Assembly (NCBI GenBank): GCA_951804945.1 | Contig: OX638150.1 | Location: forward strand, 74,896,001-74,960,000 | Source of the DNA: Podarcis cretensis | Lineage: Eukaryota | DNA length: 64,000 bases | Reading direction: 5' to 3' | In this document: piece by piece, positions 16,041-40,407 of the stretch | Numbering within the stretch: position 1 is the stretch's first letter | Layout of the letters: the number at the start of each line of letters is the position of its first letter | The notes under the pieces: model-generated | Database searches by the model: none | Seen by the model: only the letters and a program-made list of their open reading frames with translations | What the model was told of the DNA's origin: nothing | Made by a program: the position numbers and the translations under genes

Positions 16041-16223
16041 TCACTCTATGCTCTTCAGGAAGTCTAGAAGCCCATGGTGCCACTCATCTGGCTTGTCAAG
16101 GTAACAGGCATGGCCTGCCCCTTTCATCAGCATCACCTTGTGATTAGGTAAGTTCTTCAGGTTGTTCAGGCTCACTTCCCCCAGCTGGGCGTCCTGGTCC
16201 CCATATACGATGAGCGCTGGTGT
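16041..16223 (-). CDS. ABHD14B: ABHD14B last coding exon ([11 protein letters not shown]...[26 protein letters not shown])
   Basis: Acceptor ttctcccatacttag|ACA, 61 codons to TGA at 16043-16041; carries the catalytic Asp and His motifs. Not in the ORF track; translated by hand. Confidence 0.96.
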
Positions 16224-17413
16224 CTAAGTATGGGAGAAAAGAAGTCAAGTGTGGTCAAGTCAACAAACAAGGAACTTCCCCCTTCTTGGGTGCTTTCAAC
16301 AAATATCTCAAGTGAAATACAGGTTTGAGGTTGGAAATAACTCTATGCACATATAAACTATTGTGTACAAGCTCAGGAACTCTGCAAAAAGAGTCCTCAA
16401 TCGTACCCACGTAGGGTCACTTTTGTGCATGTGCTGGTGACAGAGCTCACCACCCCAATCCTCTCCCCCCACCCCGCTCCACCTAGATGTTCAATTTACC
16501 TATACTAAATGTGCAAAGACAGCTTGTGTCTGCCTTCTTCACTGTAATTGGCTTGATCAGTGCCAAACAAAAAGTTCAGGAAGCTAATATGTGCCTGCTG
16601 TCTCTTTGATCTCTGTGTTATTCAGTGTTTAAACCTTTATTAATGATATTACTGCCAGTAGAATTATCCTTTCCTGGTTGCAGTACCTTCTCCTAGCAAG
16701 GAAAACAAACCTCTCCCACATTTTAAATAGCTCAGAATCTTTGCGGTAGAGATGTTCAGGATTCACAGAAGTACAGAGAATTCCCACTGCTGTCGAAGCT
16801 ATTGTCTTACAGGGTTACCAGGGCTAAAAAAAGGTCACATTTGCAAGGGGAGATTTTTGCATTTGCCAGCCACATTTGCCTGGGCAAAGGCACACCCCAG
16901 AGATTAATAGGAGGAGCTTAAAATATTAAAAAGTGAGGAATTTGGATAACAGTTAGATCAAATGCTCTGCGTTTGCAAGAGACATTACAAAGCTACACTT
17001 AGAGGTTAAGGAACGCTCAGAGATTTACAGCAGTTACAATCTAATCCCTCTTGCTTCTAATGATGCATTTTCTCTTCTGAGTGTAGAAACAGACTTACTT
17101 TCCTTGCTCATGTAAAAGATCACACTTACTCCATCAACCCAGTAATGGGGAGAAGGCTATCACAGCAGTTCTTTTTCTCATAATGGTGAAATGATCCCTG
17201 CATCACACTATCCTTGGAGCAGTCCTTATGAGATGATAGGCAGTCATTGCAGAAAGAAAAAGTGAACAAGCTTCCCTGTTTGTGTTTGTAGGCCTGATTA
17301 TAGGCCTGCTTTGCATCTTTGAAAGCGGTTTTGTGCCTGAGAACGAAGCAGTAGGCACTGCCCTCTAGTGATTAGCTCAGGAACCCTTTCCCTGTTGTAT
17401 GCAATTGCTGATA

Positions 17414-17664
17414 CAGACATACCTTGGAAGTTGAACGGAATCCGCTCCGGAAGTCCATTTGACTTTCAAAATGTTCGACTTCCAAGGCACAGCTTCCAAT
17501 TGGCTGCAGGAAACTCCTGCAGCAAATCGGAAGCCGCGGAAGCCGCCTCGGACGTTCTGCTTCCATAAGAACGTTTGGAAACTGGAACAATCACTTCCGG
17601 TTTTCGATCGTCCGGGAGCCAAAACGTTCAGCAACTAAGCTGTTTGAATTCCAAGGTACGATTG
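17414..17664. mobile_element. Tc1/mariner (Tigger-like) MITE
   Basis: TA-flanked; imperfect TIRs CAGACATACCTTGG / CCAAGGTACGATTG. Confidence 0.75.
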
Positions 17665-17827
17665 TACTGCTGTTCTCTGTATTCCCCTCAATTATTTTTC
17701 AATGCCTTTTAATTTCCAGGGCTGGTGTCAGAAATCTGCACTGCATGACATTGACTGAGGCCCATACCCCTGCATAGTCATTTGCCCTCTCCAGGAGTAT
17801 CAGCAGTGGCAAGACTAAGGAAGAGGA

Positions 17828-18082
17828 GCTGCAGTGTGGTGTAGTGGTTAAGAGCGGTAGACTCGTAATCTGGGGAACCGGGTTCGCGTCTCCGCTCCTC
17901 CACATGCAGCTGCTGGGTGACCTTGGGCTAGTCACACTTCTCTGAAGTCTCTCAGCCCCACTCACCTCACAGAGTGCTTGTTGTGGGGGAGGAAGGGAAA
18001 GCAGATTGTTAGCCGTTTTGAGACTCTTTAGGGTAGTGATAAAGCAGGATATCAAATCCAAACTCTTCTTATTATTATTATT
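17828..18082 (+). mobile_element. tRNA-derived SINE (Squam3-like)
   Basis: A/B-box head, same body as 3258..3507, (TCT/TTA)n tail. Confidence 0.85.
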
Positions 18083-18308
18083 CTGGTCAGCAGTGCCAAT
18101 TGGGCATGGACAAAGAGGGCTCTGAATAAGCAGTAGTGACAGTAGCCAGGAGATGGGCCCATCCAGTTAATTTTGGCCTTGGCGCACCCCCCGCCCACAC
18201 ACATCTGCAGCTGACACTGTTAAGTGTCATTGGCTGAAACAAGACCTGCCCCAGTTTTAACCTCAGAATCCCCTCCCCTCTGCATGCCTAGCCGCCAGGC
18301 GGACGTAC

Positions 18309-18550
18309 TTTGACACCGGCATATTGTGTGGCTGAGAACTTCTCTGTGCAGATGGGTGCCACTGGGACATAGGCTTTAAGCATCTCACTGTGCTGGAAGA
18401 GGAACGGAAGCGAATACATCCCGCTGAGAGATGGGCTGATCACCACCGCCTGGTCTAGCTTCAGGGCCTCGAAGACAGACTTCAAGAAATTGGCTGGTGC
18501 TGGCTCTCCGACAGGAGCTGGGGCAGTAGCCTCTTTGGAACGACCTAATC
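18309..18550 (-). CDS. ABHD14B: ABHD14B middle coding exon with nucleophile motif [12 protein letters not shown]
   Basis: Acceptor gtccag|GA, donor AAA|GTACGT, 242 nt, phase 1 to phase 0; SxSxS motif diagnostic of ABHD14. Confidence 0.97.
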
Positions 18551-19345
18551 CTGGACCGCAAGAAACAAGACACTGCACGTCACACATGTGGGAAGGATGA
18601 ATCCTGATTAAATTGGGTGGAGGAATGAGTACAGGGTGGCATTTCAGTGTTAACAAAGCAATGTGGATGCTGGGGGACGGACGGACGCACCCTTGCATGA
18701 ACAAGCAGCACCAATCCAACAATGAACATGCACCTGGAAGCTCCCATTATGCTCTTTCACATTAGGCCTGGTATTACACCAGCTTACAAACTGTGATTTG
18801 AGGGGGACTGCCAAACCCGGGTCTCAAAGCACGCTTTGAGGCTGGTTTTGAAACCACGATTGTAACTAACTGTGATTTGCTACTGCTGCCATTTATTTAT
18901 TTATCATCACTCGTGTGCATGGTGCTTTATAGGGTCCAAAGAGCTTTCAATTTAAAATCTGAAATTGGAGAAACAGAGGGAGAGAAAGCAGGGGGTGAAC
19001 AGGAAAGCCAATATTTGGTTTTTCCAGTTATACGTGTTTAGGCTTAGCCACAGGCTAGTGGGGCATGGGAATTAGGACAGGGATGGGGTTGCTGGACTTT
19101 GGAAGTAAATACATGCTCATCCTGGATCCAGCTGTTATGTCTGAGTTCAGGTAACATTGATAAATCACAGTTATGGCCATTGCTGAGACTTCAGAGGACT
19201 GGAGAGGATGCTGCTGCAGTATGGAGATGAAGCTCACCATTGAAAAACAAAAGCAGGTGAGCAGCCCTAAACCTTGGTTTGCCTGTTATACCCAACTAAG
19301 CCCAGGCATAGTTTAGGATATTTATCTTTGGTTATGACATCCATA

Positions 19346-19706
19346 GGGACGCAGGTGGCGCTGTGGGTTAAAGCCTCAGCGCCTAGGGCTTGCCGATCGA
19401 AAGGTCGGCGGTTCGAATCCCTGCGGCGGGGTGCGCTCCCGCTGCTCGGTCCCAGCGCCTGCCAACCTAGCAGTTCGAAAGCACCTCCGGGTGCAAGTAG
19501 ATAAATAGGGACCGCTTACCAGCGGGAAGGTAAACGGCGTTTCCGTGTGCGGCTCTGGCTCTGGCCAGAGCAGTGATGTCACGCTGGCCACGTGACCCGG
19601 AAGTGTCTCCGGACAGCGCTGGCCCCTGGCCTCTTAAGTGAGATGGGCGCACAACCCCAGAGTCTGTCAAGACTGGCCTGTACGGGCAGGGGTACCTTTA
19701 CCTTTT
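19346..19706 (+). mobile_element. Sauria SINE, young subfamily
   Basis: GGGACGCAGGTGGCGCTG head to (ACCTTT)n tail; 13-bp TSD TTATGACATCCAT (19332-19344 / 19707-19719). Confidence 0.95.
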
Positions 19707-19988
19707 TTATGACATCCATGGCTTGGCAAGATATCGGAACTGAGCCAAATGTGTATGATCAGAACCCAAAGGCGCACACACCTGAATGACAATTTTGCAC
19801 ATGTTCTTCCATACATGAGTGAGACTTACCACATTGTTAAAAAGCAAAACAAGAACGAGGGCCTGGATGTCAGCATCAGTTTTTTGACCTTGAGGAAGGG
19901 CCAGGTTCTTACATTTCAAATTATAACTGCACTGGAGTCGCCCACAGGTGTGGAAGTGATCCCTTCACCTGTCGAGATCCAGACATAC

Positions 19989-20202
19989 CTGGCAGGTCAA
20001 CAGCCACAGCGCGGTATCCGGCTTCTCCCAACTTAGACAGAGTCTGCAGGTTTAGCCACGTCTCTGAAGAGAAACGGATGCCATGAAGCAGCAAGACAGA
20101 GAACCGGGGGCTCTGCTGAGCAGGCTGGACCTGCCGGTAGAACAGCGTTTGCCCACCCGCCGTGATGGTGCTCTCGGTCAGTTGCGTGGCGGTAGCAGCC
20201 AT
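19989..20202 (-). CDS. ABHD14B: ABHD14B first coding exon ([11 protein letters not shown]...[12 protein letters not shown]...AVDLPG)
   Basis: ATG at 20202, donor CCAG|GTATGT; exon acceptor ttttcag| at 20230 gives 28 nt of 5'UTR. Joined CDS 214+242+183 nt = 212 aa alpha/beta hydrolase. Confidence 0.97.

Positions 20203-27992: not shown

Positions 27993-28020
<28 letters not shown>
27993..28020. repeat. (CA)n microsatellite
   Basis: Perfect AC dinucleotide run. Confidence 0.95.
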
Positions 28021-28024
<4 letters not shown>

Positions 28025-28049
28025 GTCCTAATTTTCAATCGCGATCATC

Positions 28050-28730
28050 GTGTATTCATGAGCCGCCATGCATATGAATATGCATAAGGCAAGCAGGGGA
28101 TCTCCCTCCCTCCTTAGCTGACCAGGCCCCGACCCCGCCTTCTGCGTCGCTCCTGCCCGAGACGCTGCGTAGTCCCTCCTCCGGCCGCTAGGTGTAGCCT
28201 TCCGCCTGGAGAAGAGCAAGGCGAGCAGGCCGGCGGCTTCTTCTTCTGCTAGGCCCCGTGGAAGCGGGGCGGGGAGGCTTCGCCGTGGCGCCATTCGCTC
28301 CGAGCCAGCCGGGTCGAAGTGTGTCGCAGGGGGCGGGGGAGGAGGCAGGACGCAGCTGCCGCGGAGGCTGCTAAGTGAAGGTACAGTCACGGGCCGGCCG
28401 GGCTGTCCTCTGGGCGGGGGAGCGCAGCGCTTGCCGGGCTCGCTCGCTCGCTCGCTGGCTGCGTGCAAAGCCCGTGGCTGGCGGAGGAGAAGCCGCCGCC
28501 GCCGCCGCCGCGCGCAGGGGCGGGAGATGGGCGCGGCGCCGTTGGTTGGGGGGGGGCGCTCCCTGTAGGGGTTGGGGAGCTCGGACGTGGGGGAGACCAG
28601 CCGGCCAGACCCGCCAGGTGGGGAGTAGGGAGAGAGATGTGGGGGTCAGAGTTGGCTAAGAGACTCTATGCAAGGTTTTGCATCGAAGGAAGCGAGAAGC
28701 CGAGCTCGGTTGTTGCTAAGCGCCGCGCAA
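28050..28730 (+). promoter_or_regulatory. CpG island; ABHD14A promoter and non-coding exon 1
   Basis: Very high CpG density, GC boxes (GGGGCGGGG), candidate donor GAAG|GTACAG at 28380/28381. Confidence 0.8.
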
Positions 28731-29030
28731 ACCCTTCTTTGTTTACTTCAGGAATTTTTATTCCTTTTCGTTTTAACTCAGCAGCGGCTTCACCTTAAAC
28801 GGCAAAAAGCACACTCTTCCATGGCAAAGAACGCCCTCCCTTCTTCCCCAGTTCTGCTATACTGTATTTAGTTTCTTAGGCCCCCAAGACCATTGAAAAT
28901 GTATACCTATTTGTTATATCTGAGGGAGTTTTCCAAGAGGGATAGAGCAGGTGACATTTTGGGGCTCCCTGGTTTTGTTTCCTTCTTCCTTTTTAAATCT
29001 ATGAGCACCTGTGGCTGCAACTACATGGGA

Positions 29031-29161
29031 CAGTGGCGTAGCGTGGGTTGTCAGCACCCGGGGCAAGGCAAGTAATTTGTGCCCCCTAACCCGTGGATTT
29101 GCGCCCCTAACCCCCAGATGTTGCGCCCGGCCCCCCCTGTACCCCCCACGCTACGCCACTG
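29031..29161. mobile_element. hAT-type MITE
   Basis: 17-bp TIR CAGTGGCGTAGCGTGGG; perfect 8-bp TSD ACATGGGA on both sides. Confidence 0.92.
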
Positions 29162-29539
29162 ACATGGGAGATTAGTTTGCTGAGTAGAACATGTGGGGGT
29201 TCTGGGATGTGGATGTTTCATGTATATAATAATATGATTGCCATAACAACTGACAACTCAGTTTTACATCTCTCTGCCTTCAGCAAAGTGTCCAGCAAGG
29301 GTTTCCTCATCAGCAGTGCCCGCTTTATGCTCCTTTTTGTGTCACTGAAGGAATTGAAGGAGGGGGAAAAGGGAAGGTGTGTATGCAAGTGGGAGGTTAA
29401 AAAAAAAAGGCTTGTAAACAAGGGTGTGTCTTGCTATACTTAACCAGGCAGGAGCAGTGGGAAGCTGTGTGCTTGTCCCGGCAGGAATGGTCTCTGCTTT
29501 GTCTTGAGGTTGTTAATGTTTCCTCTTTGCTGAGGGGGA

Positions 29540-30367
29540 ATGGCTGGGGCTCAGAGGCACCCAAGAGATAGTAGCGCTAAGCTCCTGAAAGACGGTGGAA
29601 GAATCCATCGGGTGCACCTCTCTTCGTCTGTGGCAAATTTGATTCAAGAGCTGTTGGAGCAGATAATATCTGAGCGGGATGCTTTAGGTCAAGCCCTGTC
29701 TTCTCTCTCGGCTGGACTGGCCAGACTGGAGAAGCACCTGGAAGAGACGGACCGTCGGGTAGAAGCTCTGGAAACAAAGGTGGTGTCCACGCAAAGCTGT
29801 GTTGTCAAACACTCCACTCTGATGAGGGAACTGGCAGTAGGGCGCCTGGTGGCCGACCGCAGGCTGGAGAGCCTAGAGAACAGAGTGCGAGCTCGGAACT
29901 TAAGGGTCACTGGTGTCCCAGCAGCTGTTGGAGATGTCAACCTCATTCCGTACCTAGAAAATCTGATGCCAGCTGCCTTGGATTTAAATGGGAAGGAGGT
30001 TCCCATCTGCATTGAAAGTGCATACCGTCTCCCAGCAAAGCATGCCCACGATGGTAGTGGCAGTACAGTGCTAATAACTCTCTCAGATGTACGCCATCGG
30101 GAGAGGATACTGAACGCACCGTGGGCTTCCCAGACAACAAAGTTCAACGGACACAAGGTATCCTTCTTTCCTGACCTCAGCCCTGCCACGTACGCCAGGC
30201 GGAAGCATTTCGTTGCACTCAAGCAACAGTTCCTGAAGGCAGGAGCTCGGGCTTACGTCTTGAGCCCTGCAAAGTTAAAGGTGGTGCACCAGGGAAAAAC
30301 CTACATCTTCAAGGACAGCAAATCTGCAGCCCAGCTGCTGGATAAAATCCAACAAGGTAGCTGGTGA
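29540..30367 (+). CDS. Intact LINE-1 ORF1p-derived protein (Transposase_22 / L1TD1-like: coiled coil + RRM + CTD), candidate domesticated gene or ABHD14A exon
   Basis: 275-aa open frame with strong Kozak (GGAATGG). Heptad coiled coil, then LENRVRARNLRVTGVP, IESAYR, RERIL, FNGHKVSFFPDLSPATYARRKHF and PAKLKV..GKTYIF, the conserved ORF1p motifs in the expected order. Confidence 0.85.
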   Translation: MAGAQRHPRDSSAKLLKDGGRIHRVHLSSSVANLIQELLEQIISERDALGQALSSLSAGLARLEKHLEETDRRVEALETKVVSTQSCVVKHSTLMRELAVGRLVADRRLESLENRVRARNLRVTGVPAAVGDVNLIPYLENLMPAALDLNGKEVPICIESAYRLPAKHAHDGSGSTVLITLSDVRHRERILNAPWASQTTKFNGHKVSFFPDLSPATYARRKHFVALKQQFLKAGARAYVLSPAKLKVVHQGKTYIFKDSKSAAQLLDKIQQGSW

Positions 30368-30604
30368 AAGGTTATGGTGAATAAGGATAAATTGAAATCT
30401 GAGCCAGGAAGCCATGGCCCTTCTTTCTTATGATTGTGAATTTCACACTAGTGTGCAGCTTTGTTTTGGCTATCTCTGTCCCTTCTTTATTTTGAGTAAA
30501 AAGTAGTTAGTAACGGATACAAAGGAATGAAAACTAGCTAAGATTTACCATCACTGCAAGCCTTGTGAGGTATGCAATATCTTGGGATAGCTTCTGTGAA
30601 AGTT

Positions 30605-30985
30605 GTTTATTCCTGTGAAGAAAGGTTGCAGCGTTTGGGACTCTTTAGTTTAGAGAAAAGGCGAGTAGGAGGTGGCATTATAGAAGTATGCATAGCATGG
30701 AAAAACCGGATAGAGAAAAGTTTTCCTCCCTTTCTCATGACACTAGAACTTGTGGAGATCCAGTGAAGCTGGATGTTGAAAGATTCAGGACAGATAAAAG
30801 AAAGCACTTCTTCATGCAGTGCATAGTTAAACTACAGAAGTGGTGATGCGTACCAACTTGGATGACTTTGAAAGAGGATTAGACAAATTCATGGAGAAGT
30901 ATAGCAGTGGCTACTTTCTATGGTGACTGTGCTGTGCCTCCACACTTGGAGGCTGTACTGCTTCTGAATACCAGTTGCTGAAAAT
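30605..30985 (+). mobile_element. CR1 LINE 3' fragment
   Basis: Degenerate EERLQRLGLFSLEKRR ORF2 end and typical CR1 3' sequence (agattcaggacagataaaagaaag...gaggattagacaaattcatggag). Confidence 0.85.
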
Positions 30986-33042
30986 CAGCAGCACGTTTTG
31001 AAACATCTTTGGAATCTGGGGTCCCTTCCCTCTTTTGCCTCCCCCTTATCAAGGTGTGTTCTGCCTCACAAAATGTTACTGCAGTTTTCGTCATCCCTGA
31101 CTGTTGGTCATTCTGGTTGGGGCTCATGGGAACAGGAATCCCACCCCTCCCTGCCCACTGTTGAGTGAGCTGCACAGGACCTCTTGACCAGGGCTGGGGA
31201 ACTGAGGGCCCACCAAATGTTAGATTCCTGCACCTATGCTGTTTTACCAGAGCATATTGATATGACGGTTCACTCACTGACAGCTGCAATATTAGCTGTA
31301 ACTACTAAATAGAACAAATATCAGTCTGCCTTCCCTGGAGAAAAGGCTCCTAAGAGTGTAGGATATCGTTTATGGTTGAATTAGCTATTATTGTTAGAAT
31401 TAAGGAACGGGAGATTTAAGAGGCAATGCATTTACTTAAAAAATGAGCCTTTTCAATGTCTACTGGAATGCTAGGAGTTTAGGATGATGTACAGCCTTAG
31501 GCACTATAAGGCGAAGCATAAGGATAACTTTGTTTCCTATGGGAACATGTTTCCTATGGGAATAACAGCCTAGTGATAAACAAGCCAACGAAAGAGAGTC
31601 CGTTTAGTGATACCAGCTATTCCATTTGGCTGGGAAGTTTGTATTATTTGTTACATTAGGTATATTGCATTATGCTTGTTGAACATGTGTGTTGTGAGTC
31701 AGCAAAATAAATTTTGAAAAAACCTGGGGGGATTTGGAAAAGGTATTGGGAAGAGGCAACAGAGGGACACCTAGCAGGCTCCCTCTGGATGGGTATGAGA
31801 ATGGTGGGTTGCAAATGGGGAGAGAGAAAAGAGGATTGAGTTGTCACCTTTTCACTAACAGATCTCCTGTGCATTAATAACTGTGTGAGTCGCTGCTGAA
31901 TTTCTGCATTCATTAGCATAGAAATCCAGTAAACTGGGGAGTGAAACGCATTTCTGAATTTTTGCCAGTTGTGTGGCTGATGAAAACATGATAGGCCAGC
32001 CTTCTAGACGGACCTTGACCACTGTGCTGGGGAAGAGACATGGTGCAATATACATTCTTTTTATTAATGGCAAGTTGTCAGTGCCAGTTGCAGGTTTTGG
32101 AGAGCTCTCAGTCAAGTTATCATTAGTCCCCTGCCTCTTAGTACAGGCCCAACCTTCTCATTGTTTCAAGCTGCTGCTGTACTTCCTTTCATTGTTACTA
32201 TGTTCTCATCTGCCATGGCATGAGCAAGCAGGCAGTGGTTTGCCCTGCCCTCTGTAGGTGAGGAGCACAAGTGCAGAACTCTTGGTTGGGGCCCATTAAA
32301 AGTGTGGCCCTTGTGGCCCATGCCAGCCCACCTTTTTTCTTTGCCTGGTTTAAAATCAGAGGGGCGGCTCTTCTGAGTGCCTGGGCAAACAGTGAGGGAG
32401 TGCCATTGTGCTCATGCCCAGGTTGTGGGCTTACCAGTGGCATCTAGATGGCCACTGCAGCAAATGGGACCTAGCAGAGCTGTTCCTGGAGGATGTACTG
32501 AAAATGTGTAGAAGCAGGCTTGAAGCATTAGTAGAACTTAATTGTTCCTAAGCTGCTTGGGCAATTGCAACTTTTGGCCTCAGCCTACCCAGCTCCAGCA
32601 GGTATCGTAAAAACTTGGAGAATATCACTGATGCAGAGACAAACTTGAAGTAGCTAATGTTGAGCAAGATGAGTTGGGGCATCTTGGGTTCTCTGAACCT
32701 CTCAGCAAAAGGACTAGGTTTCTGTGGTACAAAATCAGAAGAGGTTTTGGGGATATATGGTTCCTACACTGAACCTGGGTCAAAGCACCACTACCCAGTG
32801 CGATCATTTTATTATTTATTTGGAGTATGCATGCTGTTACAGAGAAGGCCACATGCCCAAAGAGAGGCTACTCTGGACACAGCCTCCTTAATCTTTCCTG
32901 AGTCTTTCCTGCAATTTGTAATCCTTGTAATCCTGCAATTTGAGTTGCTGTATAGAATTCACCTGTTTCCTTGCCTGTGTTCAAATTCTCTGATCCTAGT
33001 GGTTCTCTTCCTTCCTTTCTGTCTCAAACTCTTTCAGAAAAG

Positions 33043-33314
33043 ATGACTATGACTTTGATCCGCAACAGGCTGGGGCTGCTGGTCTTAGGAGTCCTTGTCA
33101 CCTTCGTCCTCTACCTGTTGCTGCCGGCAATCCAGCATGAGAGATTCACATCCTCGGTAGACATCCCCAAGCCAAGGGCTATGGAGGAAGAAATGAATAA
33201 GGGTCAAGGCACAGGCAACATCACCATCTTGACAGGGACAGTTCTGCAAAATCCCTCTGTTTTCTTTAGAGAAGCTGTACAGGTACAGAAAGATGGGCCA
33301 CCCTTCACTGAAAG
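33043..33314 (+). CDS. ABHD14A: ABHD14A first canonical coding exon (MTMTLIRNRLGLLVLGVLVTFVLYLLLP..., signal anchor)
   Basis: Acceptor ctctttcag| at 33037/33038, ATG 33043, donor GAAAG|GTAAGC; N-terminal TM helix, NIT sequon, VFFRE motif. Confidence 0.92.
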
Positions 33315-34037
33315 GTAAGCCCCGCCCCCGAACTCTGACTGTAATGAGATAAAATGGCCCTTGTCACCTTAAATAATAAACCAGTTCCATGGCAGCCTGT
33401 CCATACTGACAGTTTGCAACTGCATCAGCTTAGGTTATGATTCTAGTAGTGTGTCCTCATGCAATAATCAGACTACTAGAGACAAAACAAATTTTGACAA
33501 ATTGTTCTTCCTTTGATCCAGCAGTGCATTCTGTGCCTCTGCAGATACGCAAGTGCTTGTTGACTAAACCAAGATGGCTGTTATCTAAAGCATCTTTGAA
33601 TTAAAACTATCCTGGTAGCTGCACTTCTGCTGCTAAAAATGATCCTTCAGCACTTGGGAGAATAAATACATTTTGGCGTTTCAGTTACTTTTCCACTCAG
33701 AGGTGCCAAAAGATGACTGTTACAATGGTGAAGTATCCAGATCTAGACTTTACCTCTGGATCAGCTGTTTCACAGATCTTTTTGTTTCTTTCCAGCAAAG
33801 TGCAGAAATGTTCAACATAGCAATAGCCTGCTGAGTCTTGCTGATGCTGAAGTTTTCCTCCTATGTTTGTTGTGCTAACCTATTGGACTTTTCAGGTGGT
33901 AGCTTTATTGTGCAAGTCCTATGTTATTGCAGAAGATCCAAACACCTTTTTCCTCAGCTAGCACATTTGTTGTAAAGAATCTCATTTTCCTAGCTGTCAA
34001 GCACAATATTTCAGCACTAAAGAGACAGACAGACAGA

Positions 34038-34915: not shown

Positions 34916-35031
34916 GTTGGCAGTGATCTTCCTGCATGGTCAGTCCTTCAATTCCAAAAAATGGGAAGAATTGGGGACACTAGCTTTACTTTCTGAGAAT
35001 GGATATCGTGCAATAGCCATTGATTTGCCTG
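34916..35031 (+). CDS. ABHD14A: ABHD14A coding exon ([22 protein letters not shown]...AIDLPG)
   Basis: ttttccag| ... CCTG|GTGAGA, 116 nt, phases match the neighbouring exons. Confidence 0.97.
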
Positions 35032-37665: not shown

Positions 37666-37901
37666 GCTATGGGGAGTCCCCAAGCTCCAGCACTGTTGAG
37701 ACAGCACAAGGCCGTGTTGCTTTCCTGCAGCAAGTCTTCAAGGAGTTGGGACTCCAGCAGCCTGTTTTGATAAGCTCTTCCATGTGTGGTCGCTATTCTA
37801 TTCCGTTCCTTCTGGCTAGTGGGGAGCAGCTGAAGGGCTTTGTGCCCATTGCACCTGTAGGCACCAAGGACTTCACTACTCAGCAGTATCAGCAGGTCAA
37901 G
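37666..37901 (+). CDS. ABHD14A: ABHD14A coding exon with nucleophile elbow (PVLISSSMCGRYS)
   Basis: ttctcaacag| ... AAG|GTAAGA, 236 nt. Confidence 0.97.
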
Positions 37902-40224: not shown

Positions 40225-40407
40225 ATTCCAACGTTGATTATCTATGGAGAGCGTGATACTGGCTTGGGCACTCAGTCTCTTCAGAGCCTTCAACAGATTC
40301 CCAAATCCAGAGTTGTCATGCTCATTGGAGCTGGCCATGCCTGTTACCTTGATAAGCCTCAGGAGTTCCACAAAGCACTCCTGAACTTCCTTGGTGAGCT
40401 GAAGTGA
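40225..40407 (+). CDS. ABHD14A: ABHD14A last coding exon (IPTLIIYGERD...[26 protein letters not shown])
   Basis: tctttctag|ATT, 61 codons to TGA. Joined CDS 272+116+236+183 nt = 268 aa. Confidence 0.97.
   Translation: MPTLIIYGERDTGLGTQSLQSLQQIPKSRVVMLIGAGHACYLDKPQEFHKALLNFLGELK

What the first reader, a model, noticed from the sequence alone, without database searches (positions are those of the whole stretch)
30356..33042. ORF1p exon can splice in frame into ABHD14A, predicting a 542-aa ORF1p-TM-hydrolase chimera
Seen: three codons before the ORF1 stop there is a donor-like site CAAG|GTAGCT (exon end 30356, phase 1), just after the end of the CTD. The ABHD14A acceptor at 33038 starts AA AAG ATG, so the junction reads ...ATC CAA CAA G|AA AAG ATG ACT ATG (IQQEKMTM...) with no stop: 274 codons plus the 268-aa ABHD14A gives 542 aa. 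Inference: ABHD14A has a type II signal anchor (basic RNR before the TM helix, NIT sequon after it), so a trimer-forming RNA-binding ORF1p domain would face the cytosol, tethered to a luminal serine hydrolase. Skipping the exon (28380 to 33038) would give normal ABHD14A. Caveats: the donor is non-consensus at +4/+5 and frame compatibility has a 1-in-3 chance probability.
Basis: partly seen in the sequence, partly recalled or inferred. Interest (0 to 1): 0.88.

Follow-up and report, generated by a model that had tools for sequence, protein, structure and literature searches.

The report
L1 ORF1p exon spliced onto ABHD14A
A lizard gene for a membrane-anchored hydrolase (ABHD14A) has kept an ancient LINE-1 ORF1 as an alternative first coding exon; RNA reads show it spliced in frame as predicted, and lizards, snakes and turtles share the same fusion, so it is a real, old and apparently undescribed case of a retrotransposon protein turned into part of a host protein.

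Summary
An intact ORF (29540-30367) encodes a diverged L1 ORF1p with coiled coil, RRM and CTD. A donor AAG|GTAGCT ends the exon at 30356 in phase 1. The ABHD14A acceptor sits at 33038. Exon arithmetic gives 542 codons.

Stranded RNA-seq of a very close relative holds the exact junction 30356|33038 in 9 reads from 9 start points in two runs. The canonical exon 1 to exon 2 junction (28380|33038) has 15 reads.

The same junction appears in 19 database protein models, from lacertids, an anguid, geckos, three snake families and several turtle families. One is a 542-aa RefSeq model of Podarcis muralis that is 98% identical over the ORF1 exon.

The ORF1p parts form one clade whose branching follows the species tree, on short branches. 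The capture therefore predates the lizard-turtle split (about 280 My) and the exon has been kept.

The kind is known: Kitao et al. 2025 described L1 ORF1p fusion isoforms of MYL4, RFX5, NUP42 and USP4. ABHD14A is not among them, and no paper found links ABHD14A to L1, so this is a new member of a known kind.

Still unproven: the 5' end of the chimeric mRNA, the protein itself, its topology, RNA binding and function.

The parts
28200..28380 (+). Non-coding exon 1 of ABHD14A in a CpG-rich promoter region. The donor is GTGAAG|GTACAG at 28380/28381. The 5' end was not determined and may lie upstream of 28200.
   Evidence: RNA depth is 15-18x on the + strand RNA. Joint 28377->33036 with one letter between equals 28380|33038 with one substitution in the relative; 7 + 8 reads. 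GC is 0.67 at 28000-28499.
29284..29431 (+). Conserved non-coding sequence upstream of the ORF1 exon, a candidate promoter or 5' UTR of the ORF1-containing transcript. The core 29405-29431 holds a GTAAACA forkhead-like motif.
   Evidence: The mis-annotated N-terminal extensions of the Varanus (P0004) and Caretta (P0011) models match here collinearly, 9 of 9 residues for the turtle. The forkhead reading comes from my own knowledge and was not tested.
29540..30356 (+). L1 ORF1-derived alternative first coding exon: 272 codons plus 1 nt. The ATG at 29540 has an in-frame stop 2 codons upstream, G at -3 and G at +4.
   Evidence: RNA depth is 1-8x against 0-2.5x in the downstream intron.
29624..29887 (+). 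Coiled-coil domain (aa 29-116), the predicted parallel trimer interface.
   Evidence: AF2 gives a single helix 29-116 at pLDDT 88-98. The three-copy model scores 0.66 against a best control of 0.00, with a/d-type contacts at 38, 42, 45, 49 ... 116.
29897..30145 (+). RRM domain (aa 120-202).
   Evidence: [quoted passage not shown] Foldseek hits 2ykp and 2w7a.
30152..30352 (+). ORF1p C-terminal domain (aa 205-271). The family-wide conserved residues D212, R221 and P243 are kept, in the FFPDLS, ARR and PAKLKV motifs.
   Evidence: phmmer hits the ORF1p CTD structures 2jrb and 2ldy. AF2. Near-invariant columns of the 110-sequence alignment.
30357..30367 (+). Donor GTAGCT and, if unspliced, the three extra codons G-S-W plus stop TGA (30365-30367).
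   Evidence: All 8 unspliced ORF models of other species read G-S after the junction, as GGT AGY would give, but they stop at different distances.
30357..33037 (+). Intron removed in the chimeric mRNA. It holds a CR1-like LINE fragment and no L1 ORF2.
   Evidence: Joint GT..AG skipping 2681 nt. ORF list.
33038..33314 (+). ABHD14A exon 2. The canonical ATG is at 33043. The basic RNR precedes a 21-residue hydrophobic anchor (33070-33132), and the N-I-T sequon lies at 33217-33225.
   Evidence: RNA depth is 43-54x. The anchor and sequon are conserved in all models.
34916..35031 (+). ABHD14A exon 3.
   Evidence: tblastn of P0016 and splice contexts. The exon 2 to exon 3 splice is seen as a loose end in contigs of the window's own species (X18).
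37666..37901 (+). ABHD14A exon 4, holding the nucleophile motif.
40225..40407 (+). ABHD14A exon 5, holding the catalytic Asp and His; stop TGA at 40405-40407.

Best explanation
An L1 element landed in intron 1 of ABHD14A before lepidosaurs and turtles diverged. Its ORF2 was lost. Its ORF1 was kept as an alternative first coding exon.

Transcripts that contain this exon use the donor at 30356 and the ordinary exon 2 acceptor at 33038. Translation from the ATG at 29540 therefore gives a 542-aa protein made of a full ORF1p module (disordered N-terminus, trimer-type coiled coil, RRM, CTD), an 11-residue linker, the ABHD14A membrane anchor and the ABHD14A serine hydrolase domain. Transcripts that start at exon 1 skip the ORF1 exon and give the ordinary 268-aa enzyme.

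Shown here: the splice, its share of junction reads in one relative, the fold of the ORF1p part, conservation of junction and frame, and monophyly with slow evolution.

Inferred: the N-terminal ORF1p module stays in the cytosol because it is folded and the anchor has basic residues on its N side. It trimerises and may still bind RNA. It thereby clusters three hydrolase domains on the luminal or outer side, or tethers RNA or RNP to that membrane. What the fusion is used for is unknown.
For: RNA: junction 30356|33038 in 6 + 3 reads with 9 start points, in two stranded RNA-seq runs of a close relative whose reads carry the amino-acid differences of the P. muralis model. The canonical junction has 7 + 8 reads. 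Depth drops after the donor.

Database models: 19 spliced protein models share the junction [Q/K]|E-[K/R]-[M/L]-T. They cover lacertids, Elgaria, Heteronotia, Candoia, Liasis, Pseudonaja, Thamnophis, Chelydra, Dermochelys, Chrysemys, Mauremys, Natator, Lepidochelys and Chelonia.

Phylogeny: the 16 ABHD14A-linked ORF1p sequences form one clade (SH-aLRT 100) with species-like topology and short inner branches. The nearest relatives are coelacanth L1 ORF1p at 35% identity or less.

Conservation: lizard-turtle identity is 55-59% in the ORF1 exon against 74-75% in the hydrolase domain.

Fold: AF2 pLDDT 89; top Foldseek hits are human ORF1p. Trimer model 0.66 against best control 0.00.

Full-length model: in the full-length model of the P. 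muralis protein, the last CTD helix runs on into the anchor helix (260-305, pLDDT 83-95 up to residue 300).

Hydrolase: the catalytic Ser, Asp and His align to S111, D162 and H188 of ABHD14B, PDB 1imj. The triad and the N-terminal membrane anchor of ABHD14A are described in 10.1101/2023.07.30.551196.

Precedent for the mechanism: PMC12129022.
Against: The RNA evidence comes from a sister species, not the window's own. Contigs of the window's species show only the unspliced ORF1 region, though contigs drop rare forms.

The ORF1 exon depth is only about 5-15% of exon 2. The 5' end of the chimeric mRNA is unknown. No protein evidence exists.

Database models are predictions that require an open frame, so species with a broken frame would be missed. 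Some turtle models (Mauremys, Natator, Lepidochelys, Chelonia) hold only part of the ORF1p or a frame-shifted stretch.

dN/dS could not be computed. The only codon data are 6 non-synonymous against at least 5 synonymous differences to the close relative, from an incomplete list.

The donor is weak at +4 and +5.
Confidence: 0.72

Rival explanations
1. The ORF1 is an independent, L1TD1-like domesticated gene nested in ABHD14A intron 1. Its working product is the unspliced 275-aa ORF1p-only protein. Splicing into ABHD14A exon 2 is a tolerated by-product of lying inside that gene.
For: A stop follows the donor after three codons, so unspliced RNA gives a complete ORF1p. The conserved sequence just upstream could be an own promoter. 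ORF-only models and unspliced contigs exist.
Against: The position of the stop after the donor is not conserved: 2, 3, 16 or more than 30 codons. The G-S that mirrors the donor is invariant, and the frame into exon 2 is kept in all 19 spliced models from lizards to turtles. RNA depth falls right after the donor, and 9 reads use it.
Confidence: 0.15
2. The chimeric transcript is real but is not used as a protein. Inclusion of the ORF1 exon is a regulatory or noise isoform (an alternative 5' leader, translational control or decay of ABHD14A mRNA), and the open frame persists for other reasons.
For: The exon has low depth relative to exon 2. There is no protein evidence. Some annotated isoforms are frame-shifted or truncated.
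Against: A 272-codon frame would not stay open with 55-59% amino-acid identity between lizards and turtles unless the protein were under selection. Conservation is concentrated in the RRM and CTD, and family-wide conserved residues are kept.
Confidence: 0.1
3. It is a recent L1 insertion or an annotation artefact with a chance frame match.
For: Frame compatibility alone has a 1-in-3 chance. The donor is non-consensus at +4 and +5.
Against: Orthologues at the same junction occur in turtles and all major squamate groups. They form a single clade on a long stem, far from any TE copy (35% identity or less). There is no ORF2 downstream. Junction reads exist.
Confidence: 0.02

Closest known systems
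Lyosin, the L1 ORF1p-MYL4 fusion isoform of Sauropsida (Kitao, Ichiyanagi, Nakagawa, Genome Res 2025, PMC12129022)
   Same: An L1 ORF1-derived alternative first coding exon is spliced in frame to a host gene. The origin lies about 280 My ago in the reptile stem. There is no recognisable repeat around it, and it decays in some lineages.
   Different: The host gene is ABHD14A, not MYL4. This exon keeps the whole ORF1p (coiled coil, complete RRM and CTD), whereas Lyosin has the NTD, coiled coil and a partial RRM. The partner is a membrane-anchored enzyme, so the ORF1p module would be tethered to a membrane. It was found here in squamates and turtles only. It is kept in snakes, where Lyosin is lost.
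L1-RFX5 (catfish), NUP42-L1 (Afrotheria), USP4-L1 (Carnivora), same paper
   Same: All are ORF1p-like exons used as the first or last coding exon of a host gene.
   Different: They are younger and lineage-restricted, with soluble nuclear or cytosolic partners. ABHD14A was not detected by that screen (E < 1e-10 to Dfam ORF1p, proteins labelled 'isoform'). The likely reasons are that this ORF1p is too diverged and that many models are named LOC... without isoforms.
L1TD1 (mammalian stand-alone gene derived from L1 ORF1)
   Same: A domesticated ORF1p with RRM and CTD, kept by the host.
   Different: L1TD1 is a free-standing gene with duplicated domains, found in mammals only. Here the ORF1p is one exon of another gene and is joined to a transmembrane hydrolase.
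Canonical L1 ORF1p (human, PDB 2ykp)
   Same: Same three-domain architecture and fold. The ARR and (Y)PAKL motifs align. A trimer-type coiled coil is predicted.
   Different: Identity is about 20%. No Pfam Transposase_22 hit. No ORF2 follows. It is single-copy and syntenic across species. The arginine of the human REKG motif is W, Q or L in squamates (motif names are from my knowledge of the L1 literature).

Membership tests
L1 ORF1p (type II ORF1p: coiled coil + RRM + CTD) | N-terminal coiled coil able to form a parallel trimer | tested here: met
   AF2 helix 29-116. The three-copy model scores 0.66 against a best control of 0.00, with heptad contacts. This is a model only and may draw on the solved human trimer.
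L1 ORF1p (type II ORF1p: coiled coil + RRM + CTD) | Central RRM fold followed by the ORF1p-specific CTD fold | tested here: met
   phmmer against 2ykp gives E = 1e-4, against the CTD 2jrb 1.5e-3. Foldseek top 10 are human ORF1p, E = 5e-11, TM 0.67.
L1 ORF1p (type II ORF1p: coiled coil + RRM + CTD) | Match to the Pfam ORF1p models (Transposase_22 and related) | tested here: not met
   No family at E <= 0.01, and only coiled-coil noise at E <= 10. The coelacanth L1 ORF1p relatives fail as well, so the models seem too mammal-centred to decide.
L1 ORF1p (type II ORF1p: coiled coil + RRM + CTD) | Part of an L1 element: ORF2 (endonuclease and reverse transcriptase) downstream, multi-copy | tested here: not met
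   No ORF2-like ORF lies in 30367-33037. Read depth on the exon is unique-copy. The nearest non-orthologous proteins are 35% identical or less. It is a derived exon, not an element.
L1 ORF1p (type II ORF1p: coiled coil + RRM + CTD) | Binds single-stranded nucleic acid and has chaperone activity | not testable with these tools
   Only the retention of family-wide conserved residues (E113, R117, N120, R163, D212, R221, P243) could be checked.
L1 ORF1p fusion isoforms of host genes (Kitao et al. 2025) | The ORF1p-like exon is spliced in frame to host coding exons, and a canonical isoform without it coexists | tested here: met
   Joints 30356|33038 (9 reads) and 28380|33038 (15 reads) occur in the same runs.
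L1 ORF1p fusion isoforms of host genes (Kitao et al. 2025) | Orthologous fusion present in two or more genera | tested here: met
   More than 14 genera of squamates and turtles share the same junction. They form one clade.
L1 ORF1p fusion isoforms of host genes (Kitao et al. 2025) | Purifying selection on the ORF1-derived exon (dN/dS < 1) | tested here: inconclusive
Protein-level evidence: 55-59% identity between lizard and turtle, an open frame, and short branches. Against the close relative there are 6 non-synonymous and at least 5 synonymous changes, from an incomplete list.
ABHD14A | Ser-Asp-His triad within an alpha/beta hydrolase fold and the SxSxS nucleophile motif | tested here: met
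   P0016 against 1imj gives E = 3e-50 with S111, D162 and H188 aligned to Ser, Asp and His. The window's exons 4 and 5 keep them, but the motif reads S-S-S-M-C, that is SxSxC. The motif definition is from 10.1101/2023.07.30.551196.
ABHD14A | N-terminal membrane-anchoring helix, and a neighbouring ABHD14B paralogue | tested here: met
   A 21-residue hydrophobic stretch follows RNR in exon 2. It is helical in the full-length model. ABHD14B-like exons lie on the minus strand at 16056-20148.

The most novel reading that the evidence does not exclude
Reptiles make a membrane-anchored L1 ORF1p. A complete, trimer-forming RNA-binding chaperone module has been held for about 280 My on the cytosolic face of a secretory-pathway or plasma membrane by the ABHD14A signal anchor, with three serine-hydrolase domains on the other side. 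This would be the fifth ORF1p exonisation and structurally the most complete one. It would be the first to join ORF1p to a transmembrane enzyme, with a function (RNA or RNP tethering, control of retroelements, or oligomerisation of the enzyme) unlike that of any known ORF1p derivative. No paper in the searchable library reports it.
Probability: 0.5. Interest if true: 0.75.

Novelty: new member of a known kind. Interest (0 to 1): 0.62.

Why it matters
Very few host proteins are known to derive from L1 ORF1p: L1TD1 and the four fusion isoforms described in 2025. This case adds one that keeps all three ORF1p domains, is as old as Lyosin, survives in snakes, and is attached to a membrane enzyme of unknown function.

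It gives a natural experiment on what an ORF1p module can do outside retrotransposition. It also gives a handle on ABHD14A biology. Finally, it shows that screens based on Dfam similarity and on 'isoform' labels miss diverged cases, so more probably remain in existing annotations.

Tried and rejected
- Pfam scans of the ORF1 exon found nothing usable. The same was true for coelacanth relatives.
No orthologue DNA could be fetched, so there was no dN/dS, no direct look at donors in other genomes, and no check of crocodilian, tuatara or bird introns.
- Three word-index protein searches and one full HMMER scan gave no archosaur, tuatara, mammal or amphibian orthologue. This is weak evidence of absence, because unannotated exons are invisible to protein searches. 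The ABHD14 survey lists ABHD14A in mammals, fish and six reptiles but names no birds, which would fit loss of the host gene in birds.
- The full-length AF2 model was confident only up to residue 300. The hydrolase half scored pLDDT below 50 because the alignment was shallow, so nothing is claimed from it beyond the continuous helix 260-305.
- The sigma-70 promoter and terminator scan does not apply to a vertebrate and was ignored.
- A words search of earlier scan notes found nothing.
- I did not build, translate as one piece or search a joined spliced model of the window. Frame and length were checked by arithmetic and exon-by-exon translation, and natural RefSeq proteins stood in for the joined product.
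The RNA junction reads make it moot.
Full report
What is in the sequence

The window holds a reptile ABHD14A gene on the + strand. Its parts are:
- a non-coding exon 1 that ends at 28380 (donor GTGAAG|GTACAG) in a GC-rich promoter region;
- coding exon 2 at 33038-33314, with the canonical ATG at 33043;
- exons 3 to 5 at 34916-35031, 37666-37901 and 40225-40407.

Inside intron 1 lies an intact 275-codon ORF, 29540-30367. Its ATG has an in-frame stop two codons upstream and a good start context.

That is 817 nt after the A of the ATG, so the exon ends in phase 1. The acceptor CTCTTTCAG|AAAAGATG starts exon 2 at 33038. The split codon G|AA reads E, the next codon K, and then the normal ABHD14A start. 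Summing the exons gives 1626 nt, or 542 codons; the canonical protein has 268. I checked this by arithmetic and by translating each exon separately.

Is the ORF an ORF1p?

Pfam finds nothing. Against solved structures, phmmer matches human L1 ORF1p (2ykp, E = 1e-4, residues 68-261) and the isolated ORF1p CTD and RRM-CTD structures.

A HMMER scan of 1.84 billion cluster representatives gives 979 relatives. With 110 of them as alignment, AlphaFold2 returns a confident model with mean pLDDT 89:
- a disordered N-terminus;
- one long helix, 29-116;
- an RRM, 120-202;
- a CTD, 205-271.

The ten best Foldseek matches in the PDB are all chains of the human ORF1p trimer (E = 5e-11, TM 0.67). The positions that are at least 90% conserved across the whole family (E113, R117, N120, R163, D212, R221, P243) are all kept. 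The human ARR and YPAKL motifs align to ARR and SPAKL (the motif names are from my knowledge of the L1 literature).

A three-copy complex model gives a parallel, in-register coiled coil. It scores 0.66 against a best control of 0.00. The runs agree in at least 90% of contacts, and partner pLDDT is at least 77. In the tool's calibration, 21 of 30 solved homo-pairs reached the mark and 0 of 23 single chains did. Because the human trimer is solved, the pass shows likeness rather than proof.

No ORF2 follows the ORF, and the downstream intron holds unrelated repeats. So this is a diverged but complete ORF1p module without its element.

Is the splice real?

Both reads tools were used once.

The ORF1 exon is held completely by runs of one organism, presumably the source species. 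About 65% of its sampled words are held by runs of a second organism. The reads of that second organism carry five of the six amino-acid differences that separate the window from the RefSeq Podarcis muralis protein.

I laid two stranded bulk RNA-seq runs of that relative on 28200-33400. The joint 30354->33036 'GT..AG (cut +2)' equals 30356|33038. It has 6 and 3 reads, each from a different start point, with at least 62 nt on the shorter side. The reads have the same orientation as all other ABHD14A reads.

The canonical joint has 7 and 8 reads. It is reported as 28377->33036 with one letter between, which is 28380|33038 with one substitution in the relative.

About 12% of each run was read. 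Depth was:
- 1-8x on the ORF1 exon;
- 0-2.5x on the intron behind it;
- 15-18x on exon 1;
- 43-54x on exon 2.

The chimeric form is therefore a substantial minority at the exon 2 acceptor in that sample, 9 of 24 junction reads.

Contigs of the window's own species show the exon 2 to exon 3 splice but only the unspliced ORF1 region. Contigs drop rare forms, so this is not evidence against the splice.

No joint into the 5' side of the ORF1 exon was listed. A possible acceptor (polypyrimidine tract, then AG at 29533-29534) and an own start site are both compatible with the depth profile. The 5' structure stays open.

Is it conserved?

Protein searches returned the same fusion from many reptiles.

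| Species | Accession or locus name | Length (aa) |
|---|---|---|
| Podarcis muralis | XP_028574569.2 | 542 |
| Lacerta agilis | XP_032996546.1 | 542 |
| Elgaria multicarinata | XP_062977194.1 | 542 |
| Candoia aspera | XP_063147991.1 ('ABHD14A isoform X1') | 525 |
| Liasis olivaceus | PHA67_006993 | 529 |
| Pseudonaja textilis | ABHD14A-like | 520 |
| Thamnophis sirtalis | LOC106546883 | 858 |
| Heteronotia binoei | XP_060095961.1 | 461 |
| Chelydra serpentina | KAG6938137.1 | 537 |
| Dermochelys coriacea | XP_043374920.1 | 537 |
| Chrysemys picta | XP_065407444.1 | 537 |

The Podarcis muralis model is 98% identical to the window over the ORF1 exon. The 858-aa Thamnophis model contains the chimera sequence twice, which looks like an assembly duplication. 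Partial models come from Mauremys, Natator, Lepidochelys and Chelonia.

All 19 spliced models have the junction at the same residue, [Q/K]|E-[K/R]-[M/L]-T-M...LIRNRL. All 8 unspliced ORF models read G-S after it, as a conserved G|GT AGY donor would give. Their stops fall 2, 3, 16 or more than 30 codons later. The donor and the frame are therefore conserved, but the unspliced stop is not.

In a maximum-likelihood tree with 39 other ORF1p relatives, the 16 ABHD14A-linked sequences form one clade (SH-aLRT 100) on a long stem. Turtles sit opposite squamates. Lacertids, anguimorphs, snakes and geckos are each grouped. End branches are far shorter than those of the transposon-type relatives. The nearest outside sequences are coelacanth L1 ORF1p-like proteins at 35% identity or less.

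Lizard-turtle identity is 55-59% over the ORF1 exon. It is highest in the coiled coil, RRM and CTD and lowest in the first 35 residues. The hydrolase domain is 74-75% identical.

An open 272-codon frame with this identity after a split that Kitao et al. place at about 280 My (PMC12129022) implies purifying selection.

No archosaur, tuatara, mammal or amphibian orthologue appeared. That is weak evidence, since unannotated exons cannot be seen this way. A survey of ABHD14 enzymes lists ABHD14A from mammals, fish and only six reptiles, and names no birds (10.1101/2023.07.30.551196).

How it probably works

Shown: two mRNA forms share exon 2 onward. One starts in exon 1 and gives the 268-aa enzyme. 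The other contains the ORF1 exon and encodes the 542-aa chimera.

Inferred: the ABHD14A part begins with R-N-R and a 21-residue hydrophobic helix. An N-[I/V]-T sequon conserved in all species lies 29 residues after the helix. ABHD14A is described as anchored by this N-terminal helix. With a folded 272-residue domain and the basic residues on its N side, the anchor should insert with the ORF1p module in the cytosol and the hydrolase on the luminal or outer side.

Only 11 residues separate the last CTD helix from the anchor. In the full-length model they form one continuous helix, 260-305 (the hydrolase half of that model is unreliable). In a parallel trimer all three C-termini point the same way. 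A trimer standing on the membrane, with the RRM-CTD ring next to the bilayer, is therefore geometrically plausible.

The hydrolase keeps the Ser-Asp-His triad aligned to ABHD14B.

Three possible uses cannot be told apart here:
- tethering of RNA or RNP to a membrane;
- interference with retroelement RNPs;
- simple trimerisation of the enzyme.

Comparison with what is known

Kitao, Ichiyanagi and Nakagawa (Genome Res 2025, PMC12129022) defined exactly this kind of event. They describe Lyosin (L1 ORF1p-MYL4, Sauropsida, about 280 My, testis-specific), L1-RFX5, NUP42-L1 and USP4-L1. ABHD14A is not mentioned in that paper.

Their screen required E < 1e-10 to Dfam ORF1p and the word 'isoform' in the protein name. 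This diverged exon and the 'LOC...' names would fail both criteria.

Searches for ABHD14A together with ORF1, retrotransposon, LINE-1 or L1TD1 found no report.

The case is therefore a new member of a known kind. It has three distinguishing points: a complete ORF1p, a transmembrane enzyme partner, and retention in snakes. It is already present, unrecognised, in RefSeq predictions.

Verdict

Confidence that this is a conserved, spliced ORF1p-ABHD14A fusion isoform is about 0.7. The topology, trimer, RNA binding and function are inferences. Interest is moderate to high for transposon domestication and for the orphan enzyme ABHD14A.

Noticed in passing
window 29023-29169: A 131-bp element (29031-29161) has perfect 17-bp terminal inverted repeats (CAGTGGCGTAGCGTGGG) and an 8-bp target duplication (ACATGGGA). 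It is very high-copy in all runs. The close relative has the empty site (joint 29022->29162 in RNA reads and a contig), so this is a recent hAT-type MITE insertion in the window's lineage.
   Followed up: yes
window about 30560-30985: A multi-copy repeat lies in the intron behind the ORF1 exon (depth up to 640 in contigs, many loose ends). ORF 30572-30766 reads like the C-terminal end of a CR1-type LINE ORF2 (LGLFSLEKRR...). It is not an L1 ORF2. The CR1 assignment is from my own knowledge only.
   Followed up: no
window 37785-37787 (exon 4): The nucleophile motif reads S-S-S-M-C-G (SxSxC) in the window. P. muralis and all other models have S-S-S-M-S-G (SxSxS). The aligned catalytic serine itself is kept. 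This could be a species difference, a polymorphism or an assembly error.
   Followed up: partly
window 16056-20148, minus strand: Exons of an ABHD14B-like paralogue (44-55% identical to the ABHD14A hydrolase part) lie head to head with ABHD14A, the arrangement I recall for the human locus.
   Followed up: partly
P0016 (Podarcis muralis XP_028574569.2), residue 221: The RefSeq P. muralis protein has Q at the second arginine of the ARR motif. This position is R in the window, in all other orthologues, and in over 90% of 110 ORF1p relatives.
   Followed up: no
P0009 (Chrysemys), P0010 (Sphaerodactylus), P0023 (Lepidochelys): Several annotated isoforms carry the ORF1p part and the anchor but then run into the same out-of-frame reading of exons 4-5 (for example by skipping the 116-nt exon 3). 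That would give a hydrolase-less, membrane-anchored ORF1p. It is unclear whether this is a real isoform or a model artefact.
   Followed up: no
P0020 (Mauremys), P0168 (Natator), P0169/P0174/P0175 (sea turtles): Some turtle models contain a frame-shifted stretch in the RRM region or start inside the RRM or CTD. This hints at partial decay of the ORF1 exon in some turtle lineages, as reported for Lyosin. It cannot be separated from annotation or assembly error without DNA.
   Followed up: no
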